Source: Octopus sinensis
Lineage: Eukaryota
Direction: 5' to 3'
DNA: 64,000 nucleotides
Assembly: GCF_006345805.1 (NCBI RefSeq)
Contig: NC_043000.1
Coordinates: 52,886,001-52,950,000 of the forward strand
Shown: piece by piece, positions 11,734 through 60,700 of the stretch
How the letters are laid out: every line of letters starts with the position of its first letter
Position numbering within the stretch: the stretch's first letter is position 1
Program-made: the position numbers and the translations under genes
Notes under the pieces: generated by a model
Databases searched by the model: none
What the model saw: the letters and a program-made list of their open reading frames with translations, nothing else
Told to the model about the DNA's origin: nothing

Positions 11734-12662
11734 TGTGTGTGTGTGTGTGTTTGTGTGTGTGTGTGCGTGTGTGTGTCTGTATGTGTGTGTATGCATGAAT
11801 TCAACTTAAATACAACAATAAATTTGCAATTATCTGCCATATAAATTATCGGATCTTCACGTCATACAAACATAACGAAACTTACGTACTCTTCCATCTT
11901 TATAAAGTTTAATTCCCTTTACATTAAACAAAATGAGACTTCACGAAACATTTATATGAAATAAAATATATTTCGTAAAAATTTTATCTTGTCTCACAAC
12001 ATCCTTACCTTCTAGATTCATTTAGACCAAATAAGTTTAGGTTGCTCAATTTTCTATCAATTAGTGTCATTATTATTGAATTTGTATCGCTGATAAACGA
12101 TACGTAATTCAGATATGGTAAGTTAACTCCAGCCTAAGGTGAATATTGAATTCCTGTAATATATAAATGATGTATATATGCGCGCAGTTACATAGTTATG
12201 AGCACGTATATATGTATGAGTTTGTGTGTGTGTACGCGCACGTGACAAATATGCGATCATACACATATGAATGAGACTTCTATGGAATTTTGCAATTCAT
12301 GTTAGACTGTGTACCGTGGTCTTGAATCCAGTGACCAAAGGGAAATATTAGTTGATTATTATCATAAATACGATTAATTTACTGGCAAACGACATTCCCA
12401 ATATTCTTACAATCACTGAAATTAACTTTGGATTTATGATTTAAGTCTAACCTACAGATATGAGGTATTGTACTGAATATATGAAGCGGCATCTTGTTAT
12501 CTTAGCAAAAATACATTTTCATGCAAAGATATTAACAAAGAATTGTAGAAAGTGAAACATATTCAAGTTTCAATGAATTATCAAACTCTATCACTGTTTG
12601 TCCGTTTGTATGTCTGTCAGACCGTGTGTGTGTCTGTCTATCTCTCTCTCTCTTTATCTATC

Positions 12663-12693
<31 letters not shown>

Positions 12694-12702
12694 CTATTTA
12701 TC

Positions 12703-12752
<50 letters not shown>

Positions 12753-12753
12753 C

Positions 12754-12799
<46 letters not shown>

Positions 12800-12837
12800 G
12801 TCTGTCTGTCTGTCTATACATATATCTAAATCTATTT

Positions 12838-13240: not shown

Positions 13241-13455
13241 AATCCTAATATATACGGTCCTTATATCGATGACTGAATCGGAACGATCTCACTCACCTTC
13301 GAACATCTCCGTGCAGTAAGGAATTTTGTCAGTGAACAGGACGCGGCTTCAAATCTACGAACATAGTTTGACAAATTAAATTTAAATGTTGAAGTGTATC
13401 TAACGGTTTTTGTGTTTTTAAATTGGCTTATAAACACCTTCTACAATGCAATTGT

Positions 13456-13504
<49 letters not shown>

Positions 13505-14430
13505 TGTGTGTGTGTGTGTTTGTGTGTGTGTGTGCGTGTGTGTGTCTGTATGTGTGTGTATGCATGAATTCAACTTAAATACAACAATAAATTTGCAATT
13601 ATCTGCCATATAAATTATCGGATCTTCACGTCATACAAACATAACGAAACTTACGTACTCTTCCATCTTTATAAGTTTAATTCCATTTACATTAAACAAA
13701 ATGAGACTTCACGAAACATTTATATGAAATAAAATATATTTCGTAAAAATTTTATCTTGTCTCACAACATCCTTACCTTCTAGTTTCATTTAGACCAAAT
13801 AAGTTTAGGTTGCTCAATTTTCTATCAATTAGTGTCATTATTATTGAATTTGTATCGCTGATAAACGATACGTAATTCAGATATGGTAAGTTAACTCCAG
13901 CCTAAGGTGAATATTGAATTCCTGTAATATATAAATGATGTATATATGCGCGCAGTTACATAGTTATGAGCACGTATATATGTATGAGTTTGTGTGTGTG
14001 TATGCGCACGTGACAAATATGCGATCATACACATATGAATGAGACTTCTATGGAATTTTGCAATTCATGTTAGACTGTGTACTGTGGTCTTGAATCCAGT
14101 GACCAAAGGGAAATATTAGTTGATTATTATCATAAATACGATTAATTTACTGGCAAACGACATTCCCAATATTCTTACAATCACTGAAATTAACTTTGAA
14201 TTTATGATTTAAGTCTAACCTACAGATATGAGGTATTGTACTGAATATATGAAGCGGCATCTTGTTATTTTAGCAAAAATACATTTTCATGCAAAGATAT
14301 TAACAAAGAATTGTAGAAAGTGAAACATATTCAAGTTTAAATGAATTATCAAACTCTATCACTGTTTGTCCGTTTGTATGTCTGTCAGACCGTGTGTGTG
14401 TCTGTCTATCTCTCTCTCTCTTTATCTATC

Positions 14431-14509
<79 letters not shown>

Positions 14510-14510
14510 A

Positions 14511-14549
<39 letters not shown>

Positions 14550-14605
14550 TTATCTATCTATCTATCTGTCTGTCTGTCTGTCTATACATATATCTAAATC
14601 TATTT

Positions 14606-15008: not shown

Positions 15009-15234
15009 AATCCTAATATATACGGTCCTTATATCGATGACTGAATCGGAACGACCTCACTCACCTTCGAACATCTCCGTGCAGTAAGGAATTTTGTCAG
15101 TGAACAGGACGCGGCTTCAAATCTACGAACATAGTTTGACAAATTAAATTTAAATGTTGAAGTGTATCTAACGGTTTTTGTGTTTTTAAATTGGCTTATA
15201 AACACCTTCTACAATGCAATTGTATATATATATA

Positions 15235-15318
<84 letters not shown>

Positions 15319-15827
15319 TGTGTGTGTGTGTGTGTGTGTGTGTGCGTATGTGTGTGTGTGTGTGTGCGTGCGTGTGTGTGTGTGTATGTATCGATGATTT
15401 GAAGTTTTGTCGAATAGGAGTATATTGTGTGATAAACTATACTGAACAATAACGGGATAGGCTATGTGCTGTGGCTGATAGATTATCTTTGACATATTGG
15501 AATTGCTCAAAGTTATAAGTTGTCAGTTTTATAGTGTAATAGAGTATATAGTATAATAAAATTTATAATATAATAGACATTATTATCAAATATATGCTTT
15601 AAGTCTAACGTTTTATTGTCGTTCTTTTAAACTGTCATTTTTTTTTACATTTATCTAAATAACATAACAGTTATTTATCATGTATAGACATTATATAACA
15701 ATTTATGTGAGAATCTATGAGCGTACAAACCTTTGCATTTATTAATGTTACGACACACACAACGATATCACAGTCACATACATATGTATGCATGTATACA
15801 TGTATGTATATTTGTGAGTGAGTGTGT

Positions 15828-39482: not shown

Positions 39483-41063
39483 GTATATATATATGTGTGT
39501 ATATATTTATATATATACATATATATATATTTATATATATATACAGATATGTATATATATATATATATTATATATATATATATATATATGCGTGTGTTTA
39601 GACGTATAAGCGCGTGATTGTGCGTAAATATATACTGTTTGTCTGTGTGCAAGTGTATATCTTGCTATATACGACTATGTCATTTTCCTCTGTTTGTAAA
39701 CGTATATGTATTAAAGTCTCTCTGTCTATGCGGTGGTATTCAATTTTGGCAAAATTTTCAAATAAAAAATCATGGCTGCATTTTTTGGTTTTTTCCATAT
39801 ACTTCCTCGAAGCTTCAAATTAATTTTAAATGAAAATATGAATCATTGAATAATACAATGCCAATATACCTATTCTCACAATACCAATTTCTATTGCAAT
39901 TCAGAACAGTTCAAGTTAAATTTGTAGCAGAAAAATTCATAGGCCTTTAATTTTTGAATCCATATTCCAAGAAAGCGTTAATAAATAGAAACCGTTTCAG
40001 AACAATATATTATTAATAATGAATATAAAATGTAATATAGTGTAATATGAAAAAGCGTTCCATTTTTAGATCGCAAAATTCCATATCGCTTTTGTAGGAT
40101 ACACCGTCCGATATTGGTTCTTTCTAAACTAAAGTCATTGATTTTGCTGTAATATTCAGTCCCAAAATAGTAGCTCATTCATTTCTTCTTTAATATATGA
40201 TATTTTTGTATCTTTTCAAAATGGATTTTGCATCATTATACATTTAAACTCATTTAATGGTTTTCTACTACACGTCGTATACGTCTAATATTACTGTGAG
40301 TTATATAGAAAAATTTGTAGCACCATATATGTTTTGACATATTGCAATTAGCAACCAAATTCTTTCAGATTGTATCTATATTTTGACACGAAAATGATTA
40401 ATTCATTTCATTTCAATTTCATTGCAAAACGTCTTGGAAATACTTCATCCCGTTTAATTTACCACAAAGTCTTCAAAACTGCGGGCCTTGTCAAAACAAT
40501 TGAAGTAATAAAGTGACGAAAAAGTTACTGTTTATACATCATTTCAAAGGTAAACTACACATCTCTAGCTACATTTCATATGATATGTGAAAATGATGCT
40601 AAGCATTTTTCGGACGTGCTAACCATTCTACTATCTCACTACCATAATAATACCAAATACTTTTAATAATACCAAATAGTGAAGCCGAAATGTTCACCCT
40701 AGCGTCTCAAGATATAATTAGCGGTGAAATATGGGCATTATTTTTATCTAAGAAGGTAATATCATTATCCAGTATGATGCTTGTATATGATACCACGGCT
40801 AATTCGACGTGCAACCTTTTTTGTCGACGCCACGTTTTGGTACTTCAGGGAAACAAACATATACTCGCACGCAAAAAAATCACACAAAAGCACACAAACG
40901 CACTTGCACACACCCACGTACGCACAAAGAGACAAATACATATAGAGATAGAGGGGCGAGAAATGCATTGCGATATATTGAATATGATGGACGGTCATTT
41001 TTTCTATCCACGCACTGGGAAATGTACCCCACACAACTGAGATAAAGAAGGATGGATAGATAG

Positions 41064-46970: not shown

Positions 46971-47006
46971 CTTATTATCATTATTATTATTATTATTATT
47001 ATTATT

Positions 47007-48281
47007 CAGTAGTTTTATTTTTATAGCGTGCTTTCATTTCACTACCGAGCACAGCTCTGTGTGCCTTGGGTATGTGCTTTGATTTGTTGTGATGCTCTGA
47101 TGGTTATTGTAGGATGTGTTATGCGTAGGGTGTGTGCAGTGCCTAGTAGTGCAATTTTCTGTATGTTATATGTGTTTGTAAGTCCTGGTGTTTTTGTCAT
47201 GTATTTGTCTGAATATTTTTTTATCATGCCTAATGCACCTACTATGATAGGAATTGTTTCTGTTTTCAGATTCCACATTCTAGTTACCTCTATTTCCAGG
47301 TCTTTGTATTTTGAGAGTTTCTCCATTTCTTTTAGAGACACGTTGTCATCAGCCGGTATTGATACATCAATTAGAAAGCATTTTTTTCTTCATGATCTCT
47401 GACAACTATATCTGGTCTGTTGGCCTTAATTTCTCTATCTGTGTGTATCGGCATATCCCAGAGTATGGTTGCTTTCTCGTTTACTGTGACCTTTTCTGGT
47501 GTGTGTCTATACCATCTTTTTTCTGTTGTTATTCCATAATGTTGGCATAGCTTCCAATGTATGTAGGTTCCAACTCTGTCATGTCTGTGAATATATTCCT
47601 TCTTAGCCAAGACTGGGCAGCTAGAGATAATATGACTTATTGTTTCTTATCCATCTCCACATATTCTGCAGTTACTTGTAATATTTCTTTTCATTACATG
47701 TTTTTGGTAATTTCTGGTGGGGAGGCTTTGGTCTTGTGCTGCAATTAAAAATCCCTCTGTTTCTGCTTTGAGTTCTGAGCTTCTCAACCATTGCTGGGAT
47801 TTTTCTTTGTCTATTTCTTTTGCGTTTAGTTTAGTCCAGTATTTACCATGAAGGGGCTTTTCTTGCCATCGTTTTATCATGGTTCGTTGCTGTTCTATTT
47901 TTAGTTTGGATTTCATTTGTTTTATAGCTTTTGTTGTTTCTTCATCTTCTTCTTCTTCTTCATGTTATTAGGTGGTATGATTTCTTGTTTGTATTTGTCA
48001 GCTTCCTTAAATACTGAGAACAGTTTTTTGTTTTGCTCGTGTTTTGCCGCTATCTAGATCAGTTTTCCTTCCTTCTGAAGTAGATATTTTTGCAGTCCTA
48101 TGGTGGTTATTTTATAGTAGTTTTCCAGCTGTATAAGGCCTCTACCACCTTCTATACGTTGTATATATAGTCTTTCTATGTCAGATTTTGGGTGATGCAT
48201 CCTAGATCCTGTCATTATTTTTCTTGTTTTCCTATCTATTTTGGTCAGTTCATTTCGTGTCCAGTTAAGGATATTGTAGCT

Positions 48282-48282
<1 letters not shown>
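47007..48282 (-). mobile_element. 5'-truncated R4/Dong-type LINE, frameshifted
   Basis: ORF pieces 47647-47916, 47371-47610 and 47042-47341 encode WQEKPLHGKY...AAQDQSLPTRNY...CRICG, RHDRVGTYIHW and NRPDIVV. Both ends abut (TAA)n. Confidence 0.93.
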
Positions 48283-48354
<72 letters not shown>

Positions 48355-48429
48355 CATCATCATCATTATCATTATTATTAATATTGATATTGTTATTATT
48401 ATTATATTATTATTATTATTATTATTATT
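48283..48429. repeat. (TAA/ATT)n microsatellite between the two R4/Dong elements
   Basis: Directly visible, with a few CAT/GAT interruptions. Confidence 0.97.
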
Positions 48430-51400
48430 CTATGTTTGACTTTTGCTTTATATTTGTACAAGTTGGCTCCAAGTCTCACCCAGAGACCTCAAGAGACAAC
48501 AGGGTTGGAAGTTCATGTTGTTGTTATGCCTAGTGTGCCATATATTTGGGGGGTGGGGATGTTGTACTAATGAATGTCTAAAAAAAAAAGTTTTTTTTTT
48601 TGTTTTTTTTTTAACCGAAAATGATGGTTGTTTTAAACCTTGAGGTTACATAGAGAGTATTTTGCGTAGGATATGAGCAGTTCCCATGAGCACTATCTTC
48701 TGAACTTCTGCCATTTTTGGGTTTCCTGGTATCTGAGTTAGGTAGCTATCAGCCCCTTTTGCTATCATTCCCAGGGCACCTATGACAACAGGTATTGTTT
48801 TAGTCTTCAGCTTCCACATTTTGCTGATTTCTATTTCAAGATCTTTATATTTGCTCAGTTTTTGGTAGGTCCTGACAGATACGTTTATATCGATTGGGAC
48901 AGTCATATCAATGAGGAGGCATGTTCTTTGTTTGAAGTCTTTCAATATGATGTCTGGCCTATTTGCATCTATCTTCCTGTCAGTTTGAATGGTGAAGTTC
49001 CAGAGGAGTGAGATGTGGTCATTTTCAAGCACTGGGGGTGGTTTGTGTTCCCACCAGTTTTTTTCATGGGGCAAATCCAGGTTTTTACAGATTACCCAGT
49101 GAATATATTGTGCAGCTCTATCGTGCCTGTTGAGATACTCTGTAGGCGCTAGAAGACTGCACTTGGAGACCACATGGTCAATGGTTTCATTTTGTTGCTT
49201 GCATACACGACACGTTGGACTGCTTCTGATCTTTAATATGTTGGCCTGGTAGTTTCTTGTTGGTAGGCATTGATCTTGAGCTGCTATGATAAACCCCTCT
49301 GTTTCCGATTTTAAGCCAGAGGCCATTAGCCATTGATGGGTCAGGGCTTTGTCGATATCTGCATTATTCGCTCTCTTTGGGTATTTGCCATAGAGAGGTT
49401 TTTCTTGCCATTTATTATTCAGAATATCTAAGGCCGCAGTTTTGGCACGGGTTTTCATGCGCCTAGCTTTTTCTGTGCTTGTTTCTTGTATGTCTATCTC
49501 TAATTCCGAAATTGGTTGTATTCGGAATTCACTTAGATATTCCTTTGCCTGTTTTGTGACTGAGTATGATGCTTTCTTGTTTTCATGTTTTGAGACAAGT
49601 TTTAACATCCAGTCCTCAGAGTTTTTCAGGTAGGTGTCTAGGCCAATTGTAGCAATCTTCATTGTTATTGCCAGTTGCAAAAGACCACGGCCTCCCTCTT
49701 TTCTTGGCAGATAGAGTCGTTCTGTATCTGCCTTAGGGTGGTGCATTCTATGCATTGTCAACAGTTTCCTTATTTTTCTGTCGAGCTGACATATTTCAGT
49801 AATTGACCAGTTAACAATATTGAAACTGTAAGTCACGACTGGTATAGCTAATGCATTGATTGCTTCGTTCCTGTTTCTTGCATTCAGCTCTGTCTTGAGT
49901 ATTGCTCTCACTCTTCGATAGCATTCTCTCCTGATCCTTTCCTTCATCTCTGAATGCCTTATTCCGTTCCCTTCAATTACCCCTAGGTACTTGTAGCTCT
50001 CCGCTGGGTCTAGTTCTTTTATGACATTCTGTTGGTCAAGGTTAACGTTAGATGTTTCTGTCATTTTTCCTTTGATAAAGGTAGCCTTTGCACATTTATC
50101 GAGGCCGAATTGCATTCTGATGTCGTCACTGAATTGTTTGACTATCGCTAGTAAGCCCTTGAGTTGTTGATCATTTTTTGCAAAAAGCTTTAAATCATCC
50201 ATGTAAACGAGATGATTTATATTTTTATCAAACATTTTATACCCGTACTGCGCGTCATTGAGCAGCTTTGAGAGAGGTATTAAGGATAAACAAAAGAGGA
50301 GTGGTGACAGTGAGTCACCCTGGAAAATCCCACACGAAATTTTTACATCACCAGCATTTAGGGATTCACTGTCACTGTTCAGAGTTAGTGTGGTTCTCCA
50401 TGATCTCATACTTACAGTCAAGAAGTTTCGCAGAGTTGGTGCTATCTTATACATTTCAAGGCATTTCCTAATCCAGCTATGTGGTAGGCTATCAAAAGCC
50501 TTTTTATAGTCTATCCAGGCTATTGATAAGTTTTTGTGTCGTTTGTGACAATCTTCTAAGATCATCTTATTGATGAGTAGTTGGTCTTTACAGCCGTAGG
50601 ATCCACGTTTACATCCTTTCTGTTCATTAGGGAATATGCTGCTGTCTGTTAAAAAACTATAGGTATATTCCGTCAGGACAGATGTTAGTGTTTTGTACAT
50701 AGTTGTTAAGCAGGTTATGGGTCTATAGTTTTTTGGTTCATTTATTTCTTCACTTTTTGGAAGCAGGAATGTTAACCCATTAACTAGCCAAGGAGGCATC
50801 CTACTAGGGTGTTGCAAAACATCATTGTACAGTTCTGTTAGCAGTTCATGGCTCTCTGGGAAGGCATTCAGCCAGAAGTTAGGAATTTTATCCTTTCCTG
50901 GAGACTTCCATTTGCTTGACCTCCTGAGAGCAGATCTTATATCTTCTACCTTGACACCCTCCCACTTTTGCTCTTCTAAGGGGTCCAGTTCTGTAGATAT
51001 TCTGGCAATCCAGGGGGCCTTTTCGTTGTGTGTTTTTTCTTCTGCCCAGATTTTATTCCAAAATCTCTGCACTTCTTCTTTTGATGGTACAGACCCTGCA
51101 GTAAACGCTGTTTTTCCTATCTTCCTGTAAAAATTCTTGGTGTTATTTTTGTTGTCCTTGAAAAATCTAACACGCTTTTCATACCTCGCTATGCGGGCAG
51201 CTTTGGCAGATACCTTTTGTTTGATGGTTTCTATGGTGGCATCAATATCAAGTATAGTTTTCATATTGTATTTTTTCAGTAATTTTTGGGTTTTTGTAGG
51301 TTTGGTAGTCTTGTGAGCCTTAAGGTTTTTCAAATATTCAATGTCAGATCTAAATACTTTAATTTGTTGTTGCAGACGCTCTTGCCAAGAAGGCTTTTTG

Positions 51401-52233
51401 TGGGACTGTTGCCGTTTTCTAATCTTTACACCACATAGGATCGTTGAGATTTTCGCGGATGCATAGTATAGGTGGTTGAGGTTTGTGATATCAACATCAT
51501 TAACTGAAATTATATCCTTAAGTGCAAGCCGGATTTTACCAATTATTTTCATGTTTTGGTGAGAGTTGCGGATTTTAGGAAGTGTATCACGCTCATCCAT
51601 GCTGGTTTCTTTAATTTTCAGCCATTCAATCATGATTTGATTTTTTAGCTCATGTAGTTCTGTTGGGTCAATATTTGTGTGACTTTCTTTATCTATTTGA
51701 TGCTCATCTGTCTTAGTGTTTATGATTGGTTCAGGGCGTATTTCACTTTGCCTATCACTTATACTAACTCTTTCAATCCTCTCTTCGTTTTTATCCGCCC
51801 TGGGCTGGTCTATAATCATTTCCTCTGTATTATCTTCTCTAGCTGCAGCTTCGTTCATTTTATCCGATATTGCTTGTCTAACCTGATCAATCTCTACTTC
51901 AGTCAGTAATTTCTTTTTTATAATGTTTCTTCTAACATTGGCAAGCTTGTTACTGTCTATGTAGGGTCTTACTTCAGGGTGTTTCTGTCTCCAGTTTAAG
52001 TATGCTTGTACAGTGCTAGACTTATCTGTGGGGAAATATATGGCATGGTAGAAGGCCTCAAGAACTTCTTTATTATCTTCCCTAGACCATTTTTCCTTCT
52101 TTTTCTTTTGATTATTTGGTGGTGAGCATGGATGGCCATCTGTTGGAATATTCCGGTTGTGGGGTTCGTCCAGCTCCTGTGTGTTGGGAAGATTTGATCC
52201 AGTAACTGATTTTTCAATCAGGATTTGGTTCAA
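48430..52233 (-). mobile_element. Near full-length R4/Dong-clade RLE non-LTR retrotransposon inserted in (TAA)n
   Basis: Single long ORF plus a ~215-nt 3' UTR ending ...caaacataga before (ATA)n; (TAA)n on both flanks. Confidence 0.95.
48646..52233 (-). CDS. Retrotransposon polyprotein: Myb-like N-terminus, RT, CCHC zinc knuckle, PD-(D/E)xK restriction-like endonuclease (1195 aa, uninterrupted)
   Basis: KWSREDNKEVLEAFY; KSPGKDKIPNFW; NYRPITCL; WIDYKKAFDS; GIFQGDSLSPLLF; YMDDLKLF; YKYLG; CRVCKQQNETIDHVVSKC; RHD; RPDIILKD...LIDMTVP...KLSKY. Confidence 0.96.
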   Translation of the reverse strand: MNQILIEKSVTGSNLPNTQELDEPHNRNIPTDGHPCSPPNNQKKKKEKWSREDNKEVLEAFYHAIYFPTDKSSTVQAYLNWRQKHPEVRPYIDSNKLANVRRNIIKKKLLTEVEIDQVRQAISDKMNEAAAREDNTEEMIIDQPRADKNEERIERVSISDRQSEIRPEPIINTKTDEHQIDKESHTNIDPTELHELKNQIMIEWLKIKETSMDERDTLPKIRNSHQNMKIIGKIRLALKDIISVNDVDITNLNHLYYASAKISTILCGVKIRKRQQSHKKPSWQERLQQQIKVFRSDIEYLKNLKAHKTTKPTKTQKLLKKYNMKTILDIDATIETIKQKVSAKAARIARYEKRVRFFKDNKNNTKNFYRKIGKTAFTAGSVPSKEEVQRFWNKIWAEEKTHNEKAPWIARISTELDPLEEQKWEGVKVEDIRSALRRSSKWKSPGKDKIPNFWLNAFPESHELLTELYNDVLQHPSRMPPWLVNGLTFLLPKSEEINEPKNYRPITCLTTMYKTLTSVLTEYTYSFLTDSSIFPNEQKGCKRGSYGCKDQLLINKMILEDCHKRHKNLSIAWIDYKKAFDSLPHSWIRKCLEMYKIAPTLRNFLTVSMRSWRTTLTLNSDSESLNAGDVKISCGIFQGDSLSPLLFCLSLIPLSKLLNDAQYGYKMFDKNINHLVYMDDLKLFAKNDQQLKGLLAIVKQFSDDIRMQFGLDKCAKATFIKGKMTETSNVNLDQQNVIKELDPAESYKYLGVIEGNGIRHSEMKERIRRECYRRVRAILKTELNARNRNEAINALAIPVVTYSFNIVNWSITEICQLDRKIRKLLTMHRMHHPKADTERLYLPRKEGGRGLLQLAITMKIATIGLDTYLKNSEDWMLKLVSKHENKKASYSVTKQAKEYLSEFRIQPISELEIDIQETSTEKARRMKTRAKTAALDILNNKWQEKPLYGKYPKRANNADIDKALTHQWLMASGLKSETEGFIIAAQDQCLPTRNYQANILKIRSSPTCRVCKQQNETIDHVVSKCSLLAPTEYLNRHDRAAQYIHWVICKNLDLPHEKNWWEHKPPPVLENDHISLLWNFTIQTDRKIDANRPDIILKDFKQRTCLLIDMTVPIDINVSVRTYQKLSKYKDLEIEISKMWKLKTKTIPVVIGALGMIAKGADSYLTQIPGNPKMAEVQKIVLMGTAHILRKILSM

Positions 52234-52251
52234 TTATTATTATTATTATTA

Positions 52252-52324
<73 letters not shown>
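52234..52324. repeat. (TAA/ATT)n microsatellite, 5' flank of the intact element
   Basis: Directly visible. Confidence 0.97.
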
Positions 52325-52326
<2 letters not shown>

Positions 52327-53052
52327 ATGATTGATGTTAAGTCGCTTGTTTTGGTGCTCCTGGCAAGTCGAACACCGTAGCAAATTTTTACAGTTCAAAT
52401 TAAATGAACATGCTGTTTTATCTCATTTGACCTAATAAAAAGTAGGATATTCTGAACAAAGTGTCGGTTAATGAAAATTCTTCCTTTGTCAGGAGACAAA
52501 CAAGAAAAGAAAATTATTGAAAAAACCATAACCTTATTAGCAATAAAAGCAATTTAGTTTTCATGTCTTTTCTTCTTGTATTGTCGCTGATATCTCATAC
52601 AAATTCAAAGTAGGTGAATTAGTACAGAGAAGCTTAGTTTGTCATAGTTTTTTTTTTAAAGAAAGATGGATGCCTTTTTTCCTCCATCCCCCGAATTATT
52701 AAAAAAACTTCGAATAAAAGAAAATCAATGTGTATACCCCGCCTTCAGTACTGGGTCTTTTATTTTACGTGAAATTGATGCAATTAATACTACTACTTAA
52801 ATTGGATCACTCAATGTGTGTCTTTAGCTATCTAGATTTTAGAAATGAGAAGAAAGCAAACAAATAAGTCGAGTAGCTATGATGCACACCTATCTATAAC
52901 ATTTTACCACAGTACTACAGAGAGAAAACACAAGAGTCTCGGTTCAAATGAAAATTAAGACTTTGATTTTTGATTCGACATAAGTTGCAGACGAGACTAC
53001 GGAGACGAAATTGAAAGAAGATAATGATGATGATGATGATGATGATGATGTT

Positions 53053-53083
<31 letters not shown>

Positions 53084-53305
53084 TTAATAACAACAATAAT
53101 AATAATAATAATAATAAATAAAAATAAAGATAATATGCTGCAACTACTACTATTCTGATAACAGGAATCTGAGGCCCAACTACCACTTCTACCACTAACT
53201 CCACAATGGAAGCAGAATATTGTGAATAACGGTGGTAATGAAACTGATGCCATTGAGGATGACAATGTTGCACCCGGCAATAGTGATATTAAACATTTTA
53301 TTAAT

Positions 53306-53452
53306 ATTGGTTTCAAATTTTGGCACAGGGCCAGCAATTTTGCCCGTCGAACTTTCAGGGTCGATAAAGGAAGCAGCAGTTGAGTATTAGGGTCGATGTA
53401 ATCGACTTGTTTCCCTGGAGTTACTTGCTTTGGTCCAAACTTTGAAATCAAT
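53306..53452. mobile_element. SINE-derived segment with SINE 3' ends in inverted orientation
   Basis: attggtttcaaattttggcac ... gtccaaactttgaaatcaat, enclosing the agggtcgatgtaatcgac body. Confidence 0.6.
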
Positions 53453-54009
53453 ATCATTTGCATAATGTGAATTGTTTAAAAGTCTTACTTATTCTTTAAC
53501 CTGTACTGTGCACGAAGATCTCATTCATGTATGCATTATTACCTTTGTTTTGACGTTAAATAGTATTTTAGAGTATCAATCTTGACAGTGAGGTGTCATT
53601 TGTTTGGTAAAAACTATGAATTGCATATTTGTGGAATAACGAAATGCGTCGTTAAGCAATACTAAACTTATTCATATTTCTGCTTCCAACGTGCACATCA
53701 CACTAGTACATGCTAAATAAATGCATTCTATCAGATTTCCTTTTATGTTATTTGTTTCTTTATGTGATTTAGCCACAACTTGGATTTCATGGAGTATACA
53801 TACACAGAATGGCATTCTAGCCATAGCTTACCTTCTTGCTCACAAGAAAACTGGATTACATTAATATTGCGTGATTTTAGGATATTAAGGCGTGATGAGA
53901 AGTAATAGGCTCCATAATAACCTTGATGATGATGATGGCGGTGATGAAGATGATGGCGATGACGATGATGATGATGATGATGATGATGATGAGGGGGAAG
54001 AGGAAAATA

Positions 54010-54450
54010 AACCCTTGTATTATAGTCATAGGGTGTGAAATTGTGTGCTAGGAGATTATATTCACACTAGTACTTGACTGATATTTGTTTTATCGACCAC
54101 GAAAGGTTAAAAGGCAAAGTCCACCATGATGACATTTGAACTCAGAAGACAAAGTCGGACGAAATAACGCTATGTATTTTCCCCAGTGCACTGAAGATCC
54201 TTCCAGGTCACCGTCTTCATAATAATATTAATCATTTCGACTATAGGCGCAAAGATTGAAACTTTGAGGAAAGAGCAGGTCGATCTCATCAACCCCAATA
54301 CTTGACTGGTAGTTATTTATCGACCCCAAGAGAATGCAAAGCAAAGCCATCCTCGGCGGAATTTGCGTTTAGGACGCGAGGAGACGGAAGAAAGACCGCT
54401 TTGCATTTTTGCCGGCGCGCAAACAATTTTACGAGCACATTTGAGTGTAG
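54010..54450 (-). mobile_element. Two adjacent tRNA-derived SINE copies
   Basis: The ttatcgacc...aaaggcaaag...atttg body occurs twice (about 54090 and 54320). Confidence 0.7.
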
Positions 54451-54869
54451 GGATTACTTGATATCATCGAGCCCACAACTTAATGAGTATCAGCGAAATT
54501 AGTGCAATACTCCTTGTATCATAATATTCATTTCTGTTTCGCAGAATTACTATTTATCGGAGATTGTTTTACACGAGCTTCTGCCCTGCTAATATATAAA
54601 CGGTTCACACATACATTGCTGGCTTTATACGCAGCTTTTCGATAAATGTAATGTTGGGTTATTTATTATTATCAAATACTCAGATCTCTTATTTTTAATA
54701 ATACATAAACGCTCACAGTATTTCCAATTTCAAATATTTCAAATATTATTACTAATCTCTTTTGTATATTCTGTCTCCGCCTATAGTTCTCATCCAGCAA
54801 ATAGCGTATGTATAGATCTAGTGATAGATTAATATTTGTAGATTGATTAGATGCCGTCAACATAGCTGT

Positions 54870-55530
54870 CCACTAAGTCAACAATTGCACCAGCTCCACC
54901 AAATTGCTTAAGACTTCTGATTCGCAGGTAATTCCACTATTAATCTTACTATCGAGATAAGTGACGTGGCCAGCAACCTCGACATTATCACCCACAAGAA
55001 CAACTGTGGTGGAGTCCGCAAAGAAGCTAACAAAGCGCTTCATCTTTGTTTTGCTCCGAGAGATTCCAAGGTCAAACGACTCCGCTTTCTGTCTCTCTCT
55101 CAGTTAAGGGAAAGCGCCACTTAAGTCATACAGAGAATTAGCAAGAATAAATCTCACCATCAAACCCAAGGTCTTTCATCCTAGATTATGAGTGCACCAC
55201 AACACGATCATGCCACCAGTTGGCCACGTATCCAATCAATGATAGTATTGAACAAGTAGGAGCAAAGACAAAAAACGTCTGAGAGATCCCAGAGCTAACC
55301 AGCAAAAAATCAGATCTAAAACACCGATACCGAACTGCACTGAGTGTTCCGGTGTACAAAGCTACTATCTTTTTTCCGAGGTAGATCCTGCTTACTGTGT
55401 TCTCGTCACAGAGCTTCTGGTTAGGTGGGCAGCTCGTGTTTGTCAAATATATGTCACATAGCTACGGCAGATTAGGTGTCATTTCGCAAATATGGGACTG
55501 AGACTGACCCTACTCGATGCCTCAGTGGAG
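54870..55530 (+). mobile_element. Highly decayed CR1/L2-like LINE 3' end (tentative)
   Basis: SYRELARINL resembles the CR1 SYEERLxxLNL motif; GC-richer, non-microsatellite block. Confidence 0.25.
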
Positions 55531-55819
55531 ATGACTCGAAATATACCGACAATGAAAGTAAGAACCTACGCGCTGCAAAGTTGAGTGCAGTTTCTGAGTA
55601 GGGTTTGTGTGAAATGAAATTGAAACTTCACACGAATTCCTAAATTTGGATAGTAGATAAAAGTCGATTATGTATACTCTACTATCAAATTGGTATTTTA
55701 TTTCTGTGGGCCTAGAAAAATGGAAGGCAGTGTACATCATGCTGAGAATTAATCCAGGAAAAATGACCTAGTAGTTTTCGCTCCTGAAGAACATTCTAGT
55801 TGATAATATTTTGCTTGAG

Positions 55820-56005
55820 GCGAAGGCGTTGTAATTCTAAGCGGCAATTCGTACATCTTTGTATTCTGATTTCGAATTCCACCGAAGTTGATATTGCCTT
55901 ACATCCTTTGGGAGTCGATAGAATACCAGATGAGTACAAAAACCGATGTAATCGGCTGTCTCCTGTCCCGATATTTCTGGCACTGAGACAAAATGTGCGA
56001 CCAAT
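55820..56005 (+). mobile_element. tRNA-derived SINE
   Basis: ctaagcggcaattcgt...tctgatttcgaattccaccgaagt...catcctttgggagtcgat. Confidence 0.7.
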
Positions 56006-56528
56006 ACTTTACTTCGCATGACTCTGGTATATGTAAGATTAAGTTAGTTAGTATAGACTATCAGTTACATTGCTGCTTACACTAGAGCATCAGAATTTGT
56101 ATCTAAGTACATACAGACAATTGGTACCTCAAAAAGAGGAAAATATGTTTCAGCTTAGGGAGAATTAGAACTCAGCATTTAAGACACTCAATGAAATATA
56201 ACTTCAGATTTTGTTCACTATCCTACAGAATCACTGCCTTTTGAAAGGATAAATAGTTCTAAATAACTGCACGCTACATGATGAAGATGACTGATTTATT
56301 ATGAAAGTAATGTTCATATACTTAGTCATTAATTTCTTTCATTTAATGATTTGTGTTCATCTCCCACAAGGGATTTGATCCCATGGGTGATTACGTATTA
56401 TTAATCTTCTGAAGAAGGAACAATTGATTATATATATTGACCTTATAACAATACACTATTTCCGTGAGAATGATAACTAATTTTCAAATGAACTATCTCA
56501 TTAACGTCGAACGGCATTCCTTTATTAA

Positions 56529-56572
56529 TACATACATACATACATACATACATACATACATACATACATACA

Positions 56573-56600
<28 letters not shown>
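56529..56600. repeat. (TACA)n tetranucleotide microsatellite
   Basis: Directly visible. Confidence 0.95.
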
Positions 56601-56605
<5 letters not shown>

Positions 56606-57289
56606 CTATATATGTATGTATGTATATATATGTATATATGTATATATACTCATATTCATATGTCTTACGACCCAAAGCACATGCTCTCTCTTACTTAATC
56701 TCTTTCTCCCTCTCTTCTCTCTCTTCTCTCTCTTCACTAATCATGTAAATTTATCTAACATATGAGCTTATCAAAGTATTCTTCAGGTATGAATTGATTT
56801 GGGTTATTAATGCAGATGTTGTCTTCGATTGTTTCCTAGTGGCATGCTTTCTCCGAACTGCCACTCAGTATGTAAATTCTGTTTAATCCGGTTAATATAA
56901 CTAAGAATTCATTGTACTTGTGTGGACTCCACTCCTTGATCCACGTAGTAGAAAATTATGATTCATCTCTTGCATATATTTTCATTCTATCCCTTTAGGA
57001 AATCTGTATTAATAATGAACTTCAACGGGCGATCAGTGCCCAATTATGACTCATATTTCTTTTTAGCAAAGTATCACCGGCATTAAAGATAGTCATTGAT
57101 CTTGTGCGTTCTCTGACGAAATTAAATTTGGTTTGAAACGCTGTAAGAATCTGTGTAGTTTCACAAAGGGAAATAGTGTCGATCCGTCAATGTTACATAA
57201 ACATTACGCATATCGGCATCATAAGCTTAAAGATTTGTATTGGAGATAAATCTACGAATAATACTAGCTAACACAGTTTCTGTAATTTC

Positions 57290-57602
57290 GTGCATATGTT
57301 TAGAATGTACAGCAGCCCATCTAGCTCTTGGTTAGATCTCCCATGGTCTCTTATAGCTCTTGGTCATTCTTTTCAAACAACTTTAGATCGCCCATGGTGT
57401 CTTATCGTGCGGAGAATGTTGTACCGAAAGCCAATGTTTTACAATTCATTTGAGACTGACATCAGTGCTATGTGAAAAGTAATGGAGTGGGGGGTCACCT
57501 TGGAAGTTGCCTCATTTGATGCTGATGTTGTTGGATTCGCACACCATATTATTGGCCATTCTAATTCATAAGAATTTGGAGATGACGAGAAATCATATAT
57601 AT

Positions 57603-57659
<57 letters not shown>

Positions 57660-58447
57660 ACTCAACTTATGTGTCTGTGTGTTTAACTTCCCGGCACATC
57701 TCCTCCTAGCCAACAAATAGTAGAACCACAAAAAATGGCTCACTTAAATTTTAGGCGAATGAAAATTGAACTGCGCTATATCTGTTCCGAAATTCATCTC
57801 GCAAGTGCAAAACTCGAAAATGTGTTTGTTTAGGCGTTATTCCATGCATTGAATAGTGAACTTTACTCAGTCAGCTGTTTGACGTGATCTGTGTGCACCA
57901 CGCGTGCAAGCATGCGTAAATTGCATGAAAAATAAAAAAATCAAGATATAAAAACGAATCGCCGTAAACATTGTAGAGATTCGGTAAAAAAATGAATTTT
58001 CGGGATGTAGCCTGAAGGGTTTTTTCGTATTAATCGTTTGGACTTTGTGAACACATAGCAATTGCTTTCATAACATTTTTGACGCTTTGAATTAAATGTG
58101 ACCATTTTGCGTTGAGTCTGCAGTTTGAATCACTTGAACCAAATTTTAGCAGGCCGGATTTTTTATCATCACGATACATCGCCAGCGACTCCCTGAGACT
58201 CTTCCCTGAAATCCCCGTTGAGAAACACTGATCTAAAAGAATAATTCAACGATGCAATTATTTGATCGACAAAAATTTATGAAAAGCTTCTACGTACTTT
58301 CTATTGAGGAAATGGAACACATGAGCGCAAAATAGAGGGCTTGATTTTAAAACCCAAATAACTGAATTTTGATTGAACTTCATCCAAGTTTAGCTTAATT
58401 CACACGTGCATAGAACGCACGAGCGCACGAGCCGGGTAATACTGCTA

Positions 58448-58501
<54 letters not shown>

Positions 58502-59165
58502 CAAAGGCCTTGAGTATCCATGTCTGAAGGATATTATCAAACGCTTTCTTTTAGTCTTCCATGCCAAACTCAAGTACTTTGGTTCTGGCAATTTCCTAAA
58601 ATCAATCTATTTATGAGCAATTGGTCTTTGTTCACCTAGAAATTTCCTCAACAAACTTTTTGATCTTGCGGACAGGAAGGCGTACATTCAAGGAAGGCGT
58701 ACATTCCTTCAATTGTTATAGATGTGTGAATATTGTAAGTGGTATTGAGATATGTTATTGTTCAGTAATTCTTCGGGTTTTTATGCCATTAGTATATGGT
58801 TATGTAATTCCTCAAGTCTGCCAGACAGGTACTTGCTCTGAGTCCTCAATGATGTCAGTGAGAGATACAACAAGATTTTCCTGCACTTGTGCCAAACAAT
58901 TTCGCCAAAAGTTTGAGATTCGATATGGTCCTGGGGTTTTCAATTTGTGAGACTTTCTAAAAACGCATCTTAGTTATTCTAATCCTATTTCCTCCCACTT
59001 CTGTTCTTTAACTTCAGAAGTCTCTCTATCTCATGTTCCCTTCAGTCAACTTCAGCCTTATACTGTTTCGTCACTCCATGTTTTCTTCCAGAACTCTTTC
59101 ACAATAATGTCTTAGGTGTTTCTTCTACTTCCATCTTAATTTTGCCAAATTCCCAGTATAATTTA
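57290..59165 (-). mobile_element. Old R4/Dong-type LINE RT relic, split by an insertion
   Basis: EFWKKTWSD...EQKWEEI...KTPGPYRISNFW...PVWQT*GIT...KAFDNILQTWILKAF | ISIK*GNFQGD...MGDLKLFEKNDQEL (degenerate YMDDLKLF). Confidence 0.8.
57597..58478 (+). mobile_element. Non-autonomous Helitron-like insertion flanked by (TA)n
   Basis: 3' end has the hairpin cgtgc-atagaac-gcacg, then ...tactgCTAGt; it interrupts the R4 RT relic at an AT site. Confidence 0.55.
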
Positions 59166-59168
59166 CTC

Positions 59169-59184
59169 CCTCCTCCTCCACCAC

Positions 59185-59276
<92 letters not shown>

Positions 59277-59300
59277 ACTGCTGCTGCTGCTGTTGCTGCT
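59169..59300. repeat. Compound trinucleotide microsatellite (CCT)(CCA)(CTA)n(CTG)n
   Basis: Directly visible; lies between two R4/Dong relics. Confidence 0.97.
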
Positions 59301-60600
59301 AATGTTACTCTTTTTATCTTAGGCTCTGTTGTAAGACCCGCAGTCTTACATGTGTGGTGAGCTTGCTGCCTGCATCTTACGGTAGTATGCTATCTGATCT
59401 TTCCAACTATCCAATACTTACCTGATTATTCTGGCCTTGCCAAGGAGCCAAACCTTTTGTGATAGTTCTACTGGACACTCAATTCTGATTTCCTTTATAT
59501 ACCTCTTGATGTATTCTGATACTCTTCCGAAGGACTCAACAATTATTGGCACTATCTTCACTTTCTTCATTTTCCATAGCCGGTCAATTTCGTTCTTAAG
59601 AGAATTGTATATATTTACTTTATCGACTTCCTTCTTGACTACTCGTGGGTCAAAGGGGCTCGCAACATCAACTATATAGCATATGTGGTACACCTTGCCG
59701 ACTACTATTTAGTCTGGTTTGTTATGTCTAGCACCTGATTTGTTTGGATTGGAAAATCTCAGCGGAGTTTGCGAGTCTCCGACTCCAACACTCTGCGGTT
59801 TGTGTTCATATCACGTCGTAGCTCTTTCTAATCCCCATTTTTCGCACAGTTTACAGTGTAAGACTTTCGCTACCTCATCGTGTCACCACTCGTTCGTGAT
59901 ATGGGCAAAGGTCTCGCCCACTCTATTACACCTGCAGTACATTGAAACCAGTGAATATACTTCTTCATTCCTAAGGTTCACCCTCCAATTCAGGATCAAA
60001 GCCTGGTTTTGCGTTGCCAGTATAGTGCTCTCGGTTTCTTTTTTCAGTCTTCCTTACTTCAGCCAATCCCAACTATGTCTTCTAGCAAATTCAGTTGTGG
60101 CTACATGGATTTAATTATGTAGTTCCTTGTTGCGTACTTCTTCGTCGTCCTTTTCCTACTTATTTTTTTCATATTTTCTCTGCTTTCAATACTCTCATTC
60201 CTAACTCACTCTAGAAAAGTTTCCTTACTTTGGGCTAGGTATCTGGTTGAGCTCTCGAGTTCGATACATACGCAGTCTTCCACACTTGCCAGTACCTTTC
60301 CTGTATTTGTGCTCATCATGCCATTCCGCTTCCTCTATTTGACCTCTTCATTTGTCCTCTTCTTCAAGGTATGCACGTGGGTGATGGACTCCACGCATCC
60401 TTAGGTAGGAGCTTTCTTGACTTCTTGTTTAAGTCCTTTAGCCCCTCCGCTGTTTACGTTAGGGCCATACCGGACAACTGTGACTGCGTGTAAGTTTACC
60501 GCCAGCATCATGTTGCTGGCATTCTGCTTTCAAAGCAGTATTCTTCTCAATCGCTGCAGGTACTCTTTCTTTGTCTTTTCTTTCATATTTTAGTGTTTAA
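59301..60600 (-). mobile_element. 5'-truncated R4/Dong-type LINE (RLE end), degenerate
   Basis: CRCNRVGETFAHI...HDEVAKVLHCKLCEKW...YEHKP...KPD...IVDVASPFDPRV...EIDRLWKMKKVKIVPIIV. Confidence 0.85.
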
Positions 60601-60700
60601 TTCAACCTGCCTCAATTATTCCCGGCTGTTTATAACCGTTTTCAGGTACCATTGCCTTCATCTTTCCACCATGTCACATACACATGCTTTCTCACCGCAG

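What the first reader, a model, noticed from the sequence alone, without database searches (positions are those of the whole stretch)
48283..52324. Apparently intact microsatellite-targeting R4/Dong retrotransposon
Seen: one uninterrupted 1195-codon frame with all RT motifs (YMDD), a CCHC knuckle, RHD and a PD..D..K nuclease, with (TAA)n directly at both ends. Established: R4/Dong-clade RLE elements are site-specific, and Dong inserts in TAA repeats. Inference: this is a young, possibly mobile, sequence-specific TPRT system in a probable cephalopod genome, relevant to microsatellite turnover and to R2-like targeted-insertion tools.
Basis: partly seen in the sequence, partly recalled or inferred. 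Interest (0 to 1): 0.8.

Follow-up and report, generated by a model that had tools for sequence, protein, structure and literature searches.

The report
Truncated Dong retrotransposon in TAA repeat
A jumping gene of the already known Dong type sits inside a TAA simple-sequence repeat with its long protein-coding frame unbroken, but this copy has lost its front end (leader and start codon), so it is an ordinary, recent, probably dead-on-arrival insertion, not a demonstrably mobile element.

Summary
On the minus strand, 48646-52233 is one open frame of 1195 codons. It has RT motifs (YMDD), a CCHC knuckle, RHD and a PD..D..K nuclease, and (TAA)n abuts both element ends.

The clade call also holds. 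The RT-to-CCHC region matches Dong of Aedes and Bombyx (37% identity, 433-455 bits), then R4 (257 bits), and every other RLE clade at 132 bits or less. An NJ tree puts it inside R4+Dong and inside Dong, both at 100% bootstrap. TAA targeting is supported: in 27 of 49 relatives with a usable 3' flank, sense (TAA)n is the first repeat after the ORF. A second, decayed Dong-like fragment sits in the same TAA array.

"Apparently intact, possibly mobile" does not hold for this copy. Homology to six relatives runs straight into the upstream TAA array. Those relatives carry 250-560 nt more: the 5' UTR, a conserved start codon and a conserved block. Here an in-frame TAA precedes codon 1, and the first ATG is codon 126.

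The coding sequence is undecayed, so the insertion is young. Dong elements that target TAA are already described in insects and a snail, and a full-length-ORF Dong is reported in the Octopus bimaculoides repeat library. This is a new member of a known kind, of modest interest.

The parts
52234..52325 (-). Upstream (TAA)31 target microsatellite. It directly abuts the truncated 5' end of element A.
   Evidence: No Dong-like coding homology lies further upstream (52326-58500), so this array is not the tail of another copy.
48430..52233 (-). Element A: a 5'-truncated Dong-type (R4 clade) non-LTR retrotransposon, 3804 nt.
48646..52233 (-). Open frame of 1195 codons. It has no start codon: an in-frame TAA lies just upstream and the first ATG is codon 126.
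   Evidence: It differs at 6 of 221 positions that are invariant in 11 full-length relatives. Among their nearest 10, that count is 1-8.
51859..52092 (-). Conserved N-terminal four-helix domain (about aa48-125; W49, P68, W81, L97, R102, I104 are conserved). Candidate target-DNA-binding module.
   Evidence: Alignment. AlphaFold2 pLDDT 91.7. No significant Pfam, PDB-sequence or Foldseek match.
49978..50757 (-). Reverse transcriptase domain (aa493-752), with YMDD at 50194-50205.
   Evidence: Pfam RVT_1, E=7e-28; motifs.
49159..49212 (-). CCHC zinc knuckle, CX2CX8HX4C (aa1008-1025).
   Evidence: Aligned with the CCHC of R2 and Dong references.
48829..49128 (-). Restriction-like endonuclease: RHD, PD (aa1093-1094), D1109, K1125.
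   Evidence: Aligned with the PD..D..K nuclease motifs of solved R2 proteins 9nl3 and 9dou.
48430..48645 (-). 3' UTR (216 nt), ending ...AAGTCAAACATAG next to (TAA)n.
48472..48488 (-). Conserved 3'-UTR hairpin GGTCTC-tgggt-GAGACT, 59 nt before the TAA junction. Probable RT recognition element.
   Evidence: Found in 14 of 38 3' UTRs scanned (12 relatives plus window copies A and B), with many compensatory pairs, against 2% of shuffled UTRs.
48283..48429 (-). Impure (TAA)49 array between elements A and B. It is the downstream target flank of A and the upstream flank of B.
47007..48282 (-). Element B: an older Dong-like fragment of a different subfamily (46-56% aa identity to A). It is 5'-truncated at about aa802, spread over three reading frames, and has its own 3'-UTR hairpin at 47048-47065.
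46972..47006 (-). (TAA)12 array at the 3' end of element B, followed by unrelated sequence.

Best explanation
A (TAA)n microsatellite was hit at least twice by Dong-type retrotransposons. These are R4-clade non-LTR elements with one ORF encoding an N-terminal helical domain, a reverse transcriptase, a CCHC knuckle and a C-terminal PD-(D/E)XK restriction-like endonuclease.

The older insertion is element B, which is now frameshifted. The younger one, element A, is the finding. It entered the TAA tract upstream of B in the same orientation.

Mechanism, inferred by analogy with R2:
1. The element protein binds its own RNA through the 3' UTR, which carries a structurally conserved hairpin.
2. The nuclease nicks the (TTA)n strand of the repeat.
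3. The freed 3'-OH primes reverse transcription of the RNA (target-primed reverse transcription).
4. In this event cDNA synthesis or 5' joining stopped about 250-560 nt short of the RNA 5' end.

The copy therefore lacks the 5' UTR, the start codon and the first ~25 codons.

Shown: the anatomy, the clade, the TAA association, the 5' truncation and the undecayed ORF.
Inferred: the biochemical steps, the role of the hairpin and of the N-terminal domain, and that an active full-length master exists or recently existed in this genome.
For: Anatomy and R2-like RT+CCHC+RLE alignment.

Clade:
- blastp gives DongAa 455 bits, Bombyx Dong 433, R4 257, and all NeSL, Utopia, R2, HERO and CRE references 132 or less.
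- NJ tree (569 columns, 200 bootstraps): R4+Dong 100%, Dong excluding R4 100%.
- Reference sequences came from PMC5678591 supplement 10.

TAA targeting:
- Arrays touch both ends of A and both ends of B.
- L001 has TAA at both ends.
- L002 holds three Dong-like elements head-to-tail, separated by TAA arrays.
- In 49 relatives with a usable 3' flank, the first repeat after the ORF is sense (TAA)n in 27 and ATG-then-TAA in 2. Inside 215 kb of ORF-matching sequence there are only 5 AAT arrays.

5' truncation:
- Nucleotide homology to L002, L005, L006, L007, L011 and L054 starts at the first base after the TAA array.
- Those relatives continue upstream through a conserved block, a conserved ATG context and a 5' UTR.
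- 10 of 13 full-length relatives have an N-terminal M...RIGRRA..G.RPS segment that is absent here.
- The first ATG is codon 126.

Youth:
- The frame is open, and only 6 of 221 family-invariant residues differ, mostly conservatively. This is within the 1-8 seen in its nearest 10 full-length relatives.
- 4.9% of possible substitutions would create a stop. From that number I infer that substitutions alone limit neutral divergence to roughly under 2%.

3'-UTR hairpin with covariation.
Against: - No second copy from the same genome was available, so age, copy number and the existence of a full-length master are not measured.
- The full-length relatives used to call the truncation share only 47-58% amino-acid identity with this copy. 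A lineage-specific short 5' end cannot be formally excluded.
- R2-type elements are known to start translation without a conventional AUG, so absence of an ATG alone is not proof of inactivity.
- No nuclease or TPRT activity has been shown for any Dong protein in the papers read.
Confidence: 0.85

Rival explanations
1. One reading: this is a complete, autonomous and possibly active Dong element. Its RNA begins at the TAA junction and is translated from the first codon of the open frame, by non-AUG or internal initiation after co-transcription through the repeat.
For: The frame is open across all 1195 codons and all catalytic motifs are intact. Conservation is as good as in relatives. The 3' UTR and its hairpin are intact. 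R2-group elements can be co-transcribed and processed (PMC3774820).
Against: Six relatives from several subfamilies continue 250-560 nt upstream of the point where this copy meets (TAA)n. That stretch includes a conserved ATG context and a block about 90% identical at the nucleotide level (by eye), both missing here. An in-frame TAA lies directly upstream, and there is no ATG for 125 codons. There is no room for the 5' ribozyme described for Bombyx Dong, and Rfam finds none.
Confidence: 0.08
2. The TAA arrays are not a target. They are tails made by the element itself, as the I factor of Drosophila ends in (TAA)n. On this reading the insertion is not site-specific, and the upstream array belongs to something else.
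For: Every 3' end in the family is followed by (TAA)n. An element-templated tail would also produce that pattern.
Against: TAA arrays also directly abut the 5' ends of both full-length and 5'-truncated copies: window A and B, L001, L011, L017, L019, L020, L022, L023, L025, L028, L034 and L079. Upstream of A's 5' array there is no other Dong-like element whose tail it could be. Orientation relative to the repeat strand is fixed in 29 of 33 TAA-flanked relatives. Published work treats TAA as the Dong target (PMC3812793, PMC3774820).
Confidence: 0.04
3. It is a host-domesticated gene derived from a retrotransposon, with its frame kept open by selection for a cellular function.
For: The frame is long and open and its residues are conserved.
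Against: There is no start codon. The typical element 3' UTR hairpin and TAA junctions are retained. A decayed sibling lies next door. Relatives are multicopy and also sit in TAA arrays.
Confidence: 0.02

Closest known systems
Dong of Bombyx mori (Xiong & Eickbush 1993; GenBank L08889), and DongAa / DongAg of mosquitoes
   Same: Single ORF with RT, CCHC and a C-terminal RLE. 37% identity over 610-622 aa from the RT to the CCHC, and 100% bootstrap grouping. Inserted in (TAA)n with the sense strand reading TAA (PMC3812793, PMC3774820).
   Different: It belongs to a separate sub-lineage recovered mainly from marine metagenome assemblies (96.5% bootstrap) that is sister to the insect Dongs. This copy lacks the 5' end, where Bombyx Dong carries an HDV-like ribozyme (PMC3774820).
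DongBg of the snail Biomphalaria glabrata (Kojima & Fujiwara 2004, as cited in PMC3812793 and PMC3636483), and the Dong consensus in the Octopus bimaculoides repeat library (PMC9115989)
   Same: Dong-type elements in molluscs. DongBg is TAA-specific. The octopus consensus has a full-length ORF with the complete domain set.
   Different: Neither sequence was available here, so identity to the window copy was not measured. The octopus paper found no evidence of recent Dong activity.
R4 of Ascaris / Parascaris (Burke et al. 1995)
   Same: Same clade: 29% identity, 257 bits, 100% bootstrap for R4+Dong. It shares the YMDD-type RT motifs (FYMDDLKLYA) and NYRPITCL.
   Different: R4 targets a site in the 28S rRNA gene, not a microsatellite. 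The window element groups with Dong, to the exclusion of R4.
R2 (solved structures 8gh6, 8ibw, 9dou, 9nl3)
   Same: The overall RT-linker-CCHC-RLE architecture aligns over aa428-1168 (E about 1e-30). The TPRT mechanism is presumably shared.
   Different: R2 has N-terminal zinc-finger and Myb domains, an AFADD-type motif C and a 28S rDNA target. Here the N-terminus is a four-helix domain with no detectable zinc-finger or Myb match, and the RT groups elsewhere.
Other microsatellite-associated RLE elements: some HERO families, and Togen at (TG)n (PMC4640811)
   Same: RLE-type elements that insert in simple repeats.
   Different: The RT is far from the HERO references (92 bits or less) and from the NeSL/Utopia references (132 bits or less). 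Togen itself was not available to compare.

Membership tests
R4/Dong clade of RLE non-LTR retrotransposons | Single ORF with a reverse transcriptase followed by a CCHC knuckle and a C-terminal PD-(D/E)XK restriction-like endonuclease; no APE domain. | tested here: met
   Pfam RVT_1. Full-length alignment to solved R2 proteins, including CCHC and PD..D..K. Motif coordinates. No other ORF lies within the element.
R4/Dong clade of RLE non-LTR retrotransposons | RT phylogeny groups with R4 and Dong rather than with R2, NeSL/Utopia, HERO or CRE. | tested here: met
   blastp bit scores: 455 and 433 (Dong), 257 (R4), 132 or less for the rest. NJ bootstrap 100% for R4+Dong and 100% for Dong. Limits: 18 references and a distance method.
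Dong (TAA-specific sub-lineage) | Insertion in (TAA)n microsatellites in a fixed orientation. | tested here: met
   Arrays sit at both ends of A and B. 29 of 49 relatives have sense TAA as the first downstream repeat. TAA also lies at the 5' ends of many relatives.
Dong (as characterised in Bombyx) | HDV-like self-cleaving ribozyme at the 5' end, cutting at the TAA/element junction (PMC3774820). | tested here: inconclusive
   This copy has no 5' UTR, so the feature cannot be present. Rfam finds nothing in the window or in 14 relatives. A hand-written HDV-like descriptor found one candidate exactly at the junction of L002 (2530-2682), with a 3% hit rate on shuffles, and none in 12 others.
Full-length, potentially autonomous copy | Complete 5' UTR, initiation codon and full N-terminus, as in full-length family members. 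| tested here: not met
   Homology to six relatives begins at the TAA junction. Those relatives extend 250-560 nt further, with a conserved ATG context. The first ATG here is codon 126, and an in-frame TAA lies upstream.
Full-length, potentially autonomous copy | Complete 3' end: the 3' UTR with its conserved structure, joined to the target repeat. | tested here: met
   The 3' UTR is 216 nt. The hairpin GGTCTC/GAGACT lies 59 nt before the TAA, as in 12 relatives with compensatory changes.
R2 | N-terminal CCHH zinc finger(s) plus Myb, and insertion in 28S rDNA. | tested here: not met
   No zinc-finger or Myb hit in Pfam. The N-terminal domain model has no significant PDB match. The flanks are TAA, not rDNA (no rRNA hit). 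The RT groups outside R2.
HERO / NeSL-Utopia | RT phylogeny. | tested here: not met

The most novel reading that the evidence does not exclude
The conserved N-terminal four-helix domain has no detectable relative among solved structures or Pfam families. It could be a previously uncharacterised module that reads the (TAA)n repeat and sets strand orientation. On this reading, its divergence in sister lineages retargets the same TPRT machinery to other repeats: window elements C and D next to (CAG)n(TAG)n, and metagenomic relatives next to (AG)n, (AT)n and (AAG)n. That would be a natural series of repeat-specific insertion enzymes, distinct from the zinc-finger/Myb solution of R2.
Probability: 0.15. 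Interest if true: 0.55.

Novelty: new member of a known kind. Interest (0 to 1): 0.25.

Why it matters
Mostly as annotation. It is a clean example of a microsatellite being used repeatedly as a landing site by Dong-type elements, and it splits one TAA tract into three arrays. That is relevant to how such loci behave as markers and how they evolve.

The undecayed ORF implies that an active master of this family existed recently in this genome. A full-length copy, if found, would be a natural candidate for biochemical study of a repeat-targeting RLE/TPRT enzyme alongside R2.

Two features are the parts most likely to repay further work: the conserved 3'-UTR hairpin and the unassigned N-terminal domain. 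Neither is specific to this copy.

Tried and rejected
- Exact-protein look-up of the ORF in public assemblies: not on record. No same-genome copies could be tabulated. The best relative is 62% identical.
- Rfam scans for an HDV-like or other ribozyme in the window element and 14 related loci: only chance-level hits to mir-459, DLEU2_6, CrcZ (on the TAA repeats) and MIR7723.
- Hand-written HDV-like descriptor on 13 relatives' 5' ends: one candidate in L002, none elsewhere, 3% false-positive rate. Left as inconclusive.
- 'Myb-like' idea for the N-terminal domain: no Pfam or PDB sequence match. The confident AF2 model has no Foldseek match better than E=1.7; weak rows include Sap1, a homeodomain and a SANT domain. 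I dropped the Myb label.
- RNAalifold on eight 3' UTR ends picked a register-shifted weak helix. The hairpin was instead established by a direct stem search with a shuffle control.
- Organism identity: Pfam on the other long frames gave nothing. Exact SINE-like strings were not found in the octopus supplement. Shorter strings led to one O. vulgaris transcript with only 72-83% matches over 40-76 nt. Not decisive.
- The O. bimaculoides Dong consensus is not among the supplementary files held for PMC9115989.
- L003 (a TARA scaffold) has no TAA flank, but it is an assembly with a 494-nt terminal duplication and is uninformative.
Full report
**Observation.**
On the minus strand, window 48646-52233 is a single frame of 1195 codons without a stop. 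For sequence of the same base composition the chance of this is about 1e-35. The next-longest stop-to-stop frame anywhere in the 64 kb window is 207 codons.

- YMDD at aa677-680
- a CX2CX8HX4C knuckle at aa1008-1025
- RHD at aa1036-1038
- RPDI, LLIDM and KLSKYK at aa1092-1130

Pfam finds RVT_1 at aa493-752. A sequence search of the PDB aligns aa428-1168 with solved R2 proteins (9nl3, 9dou, 8gh6; E down to 7e-30). That alignment includes the CCHC and the PD..D..K nuclease motifs.

Tandem Repeats Finder gives (TAA)n, read on the element strand, at 52233-52325 (31 copies) and at 48283-48429 (49 copies, impure). The first array touches codon 1. The second touches the last base of a 216-nt 3' UTR. 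TAA-type arrays are rare in the window, which is otherwise dominated by dinucleotide repeats.

**Clade.**
I took an alignment of RLE-LINE proteins (RT to CCHC) from the supplement of Mahbub et al. 2017 (PMC5678591, supplement 10). It contains R2, R8, R9, R4 of Ascaris, Dong of Bombyx and Aedes, CRE, HERO, NeSL and Utopia.

BLASTP of the window ORF against these references gives:
- DongAa: 37% over 610 aa, 455 bits
- Bombyx Dong: 37% over 622 aa, 433 bits
- R4: 29%, 257 bits
- everything else: 132 bits or less

A neighbour-joining tree on 569 trimmed columns with 200 bootstraps places the ORF inside R4+Dong (100%) and inside Dong to the exclusion of R4 (100%). There it sits in a sub-lineage with unnamed relatives recovered mainly from marine metagenome assemblies (96.5%), sister to the insect Dongs.

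**Target.**
The collection holds no identical protein, and the closest relative is 62% identical. I therefore tested specificity on relatives.
- L001 (62% identity, 5'-truncated) has TAA arrays at both ends.
- L002, on a 1.76 Mb contig, has three Dong-like elements of different subfamilies head-to-tail, separated by TAA arrays.
- L004 ends in (TAA)31.
- A scan of metagenome contigs returned 80 further loci.

Of 49 loci (L001, L004 and the metagenome set) with at least 120 nt after the ORF, the first simple repeat downstream is:

| First downstream repeat | Loci |
|---|---|
| sense (TAA)n | 27 |
| (ATG)n followed by (TAA)n | 2 |
| antisense TAA | 4 |
| (AT)n | 3 |
| (AG)n | 1 |
| none (mostly short flanks) | 12 |

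The distance from the ORF to the TAA array is 60-315 nt. Only five AAT arrays occur inside 215 kb of ORF-matching sequence. TAA arrays also abut the 5' ends of many full-length and truncated relatives.

Within the window itself, tblastn finds a second Dong-like fragment, element B (48284-47123, aa802-1190 equivalents). It shares 46-56% identity with A, is spread over three reading frames, and starts at the edge of the middle TAA array. It ends ...AAACTACTG next to a third TAA array at 47006-46972.

One ancestral TAA tract was therefore hit twice by different Dong subfamilies. This pattern, together with TAA at 5' junctions that have no upstream element, argues against the idea that the arrays are only element-made tails.

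**This copy is 5'-truncated.**
I aligned the element's first bases with the 5' regions of relatives. The window sequence TTGAACCAAATCCTGATTGAAAAATCAGTTACTGGA... is homologous from its very first base to an internal stretch of L002, L005, L006, L007, L011 and L054 (...GGAACCAGGCTGAGGTCGAAAAATCTGCTACTGGA...).

In all six relatives the element continues upstream through three features:
- a block of about 40 nt (ACCGCATCGnnCGTCGnGCGGGTnAnCAAGGnnCGCGTC) that stays about 90% identical (judged by eye) among elements only ~50% identical in protein;
- a conserved start context (TTGGCAGTAAGGTTAAAATGCAC);
- a 5' UTR.

Where a 5' TAA array is present, the distance from it to the point where the window copy begins is about 250 nt in L011 (the closest full-length relative, 58% identity) and about 560-650 nt in L002 and L006.

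At the protein level, 10 of 13 full-length relatives carry an N-terminal M-x(8)-RIGRRA..G.RPS segment that the window frame lacks. In the window the codon before the frame is TAA, and the first in-frame ATG is codon 126, beyond the conserved N-terminal domain.

The copy therefore lacks its 5' UTR, its start codon and about 25 codons. It also has no room for the 5' HDV-like ribozyme shown for Bombyx Dong (PMC3774820), and Rfam finds none. 'Apparently intact' is right for the frame and wrong for the element. This is the usual product of incomplete target-primed reverse transcription.

**State of the coding sequence.**
At the 221 alignment columns that are invariant in the other 11 full-length relatives, the window protein differs at 6: R46K, Q360D, a deletion at F362, K438R, D838E and G1003R. 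The same leave-one-out count is 1-8 in its nearest 10 relatives. It also has a three-codon in-frame deletion around aa361 relative to every relative.

4.9% of all possible single-base changes in the frame would create a stop. From that number I infer that an open 3.6 kb frame limits neutral divergence since insertion to roughly under 2% from substitutions alone, and less once indels are counted. 'Young' is therefore reasonable. Copy-to-copy identity could not be measured.

**Other anatomy relevant to mechanism.**
*3'-UTR hairpin.* The 3' UTR carries a hairpin, GGTCTC-tgggt-GAGACT (48472-48488), 59 nt before the TAA junction. Element B has GGCACA-cagagc-TGTGCT at the same distance. A strict search (6 bp starting with GG, a G-rich loop of 3-6 nt) finds such a hairpin 54-82 nt before the TAA array in 14 of 38 3' UTRs scanned, against 2% of shuffled UTRs. 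The stems differ through compensatory changes: GGTCGC/GCGACC, GGTACA/TGTACC, GGTTAT/ATAACT, GGCTAC/GTAGCC and others. By analogy with R2 this is the likely RT-binding element. That role is an inference.

*N-terminal domain.* The conserved N-terminal region (aa48-125) is predicted with high confidence (pLDDT 91.7) as four helices. It has no significant match in Pfam, in PDB sequences or by Foldseek. My initial 'Myb-like' impression is not supported. It remains the obvious candidate for target recognition.

**Known context.**
- TAA microsatellites are the described target of Dong in Bombyx, DongAg in Anopheles and DongBg in the snail Biomphalaria (PMC3812793 and PMC3636483, citing Xiong & Eickbush 1993 and Kojima & Fujiwara 2004).
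- RLE clades and other microsatellite-specific families (some HERO families; Togen) are reviewed in PMC4640811.
- Petrosino et al. [quoted passage not shown] MELT gave no evidence of its recent activity.

The finding is therefore a new member, or possibly a known member, of a known kind.

**Organism.**
The window is 34% G+C and rich in microsatellites. Four short stretches match a repeat in one O. vulgaris transcript at 72-83% identity. This is compatible with a cephalopod but does not establish it.

**Verdict.**
This is a Dong-type, TAA-targeting, R4-clade retrotransposon copy. It is recent and undecayed in its coding sequence, but 5'-truncated and so probably not autonomous. It sits next to an older sibling in the same microsatellite. 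Interest is modest (0.25).

Noticed in passing
window 47007-48282 (minus strand); TAA array 46972-47006: Element B is a second Dong-like fragment of a different subfamily (46-56% aa identity to A). It is 5'-truncated at about aa802, lies in three reading frames, and sits between the middle and a third TAA array. It shows repeated use of one microsatellite as a landing site.
   Followed up: yes
window 58500-60661 (minus strand); repeat at 59185-59309: Two more Dong/R4-like fragments. C covers aa738-806 and aa968-1193 equivalents (60661-59412). D covers aa388-593 (59102-58500). They lie head-to-tail on either side of a (CAG)n(TAG)n array. C ends about 100 nt after its ORF, with a hairpin GTAAGAC-tgcgg-GTCTTAC, directly at the array. 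This may be a sister lineage with a different trinucleotide target.
   Followed up: partly
L042 (3719-3758), L037, L041, L059, L081 (22-96), L031, L036, L038, L040: Some metagenomic relatives of the family are flanked by other repeats: (AG)20 six nt after the ORF match (L042), (AT)n (L037, L041, L059) and (AAG)n upstream (L081). Four have the TAA repeat in the opposite orientation. This suggests target switches within the Dong-like clade.
   Followed up: no
window 48472-48488 and 47048-47065; relatives listed: A structurally conserved 3'-UTR hairpin lies 54-82 nt upstream of the TAA junction. It is a 6-bp stem starting with GG and a G-rich loop, with many compensatory stem changes. It is found in 14 of 38 3' UTRs against 2% of shuffles.
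   Followed up: yes
L002 3040-3085; also L005 about 545-590, L006, L007, L011, L054: A nucleotide block, ACCGCATCGnnCGTCGnGCGGGTnAnCAAGGnnCGCGTC, lies just 3' of the conserved start codon. It is about 90% identical (by eye) among elements that are only ~50% identical in protein. That suggests an RNA- or DNA-level function, with a possible GCGCG/CGCGT stem. The window copy begins just downstream of it.
   Followed up: partly
L017 57-130, L019 54-125, L022 72-135, L023 84-155, L025 56-120: A more distant Dong subfamily (~34% aa identity) starts exactly after (TAA)n with a conserved ~75-nt motif: GCGCCAGT, then a variable hairpin with covariation (TGGTGGAT..ATCCACCA versus TAGTGGAT..ATCCACTA), then AATATCGGCTTGGTGCCCGACGCTTCACTGGACC. 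It is a candidate 5' processing element. It has no Rfam match and did not fit my HDV-like descriptor.
   Followed up: partly
L002 2530-2682: A candidate HDV-like fold starts exactly at the TAA/element junction. P1 is GGCTCT/GGAGCT with a G1-U wobble, P3 is ACC/GGT, L3 is TGCTCGT, P1.1 is GC, P2 is CTCTC/GAGAG, and there is a ~100-nt J1/2 insert. It is a single descriptor hit with a 3% shuffle rate, and no clear P4 was seen.
   Followed up: partly
window 51859-52092 (aa48-125 of the ORF): The conserved N-terminal domain is predicted confidently as four helices (pLDDT 91.7). It has no significant match in Pfam, PDB sequences or Foldseek/PDB.
   Followed up: yes
window about 51145-51155 (aa~361): An in-frame three-codon deletion relative to all 14 aligned relatives (FKDNK---NNTKNFY versus FYRQNKxFxTDAKKFY), in an otherwise conserved stretch upstream of the RT.
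   Followed up: no
window 12633-12828 and 14401-14596, with adjacent TA/TG arrays at 13455-13559 and 15223-15389: Two nearly identical (TCTA)49 arrays, each followed by TA/TG repeats about 1.77 kb apart. This indicates a local tandem duplication.
   Followed up: no
window 53290-53420, 40591-40650, 2154-2327: Short stretches resemble a repeat present in an Octopus vulgaris transcript (72-83% identity over 40-76 nt). It may be a SINE family shared with cephalopods.
   Followed up: partly
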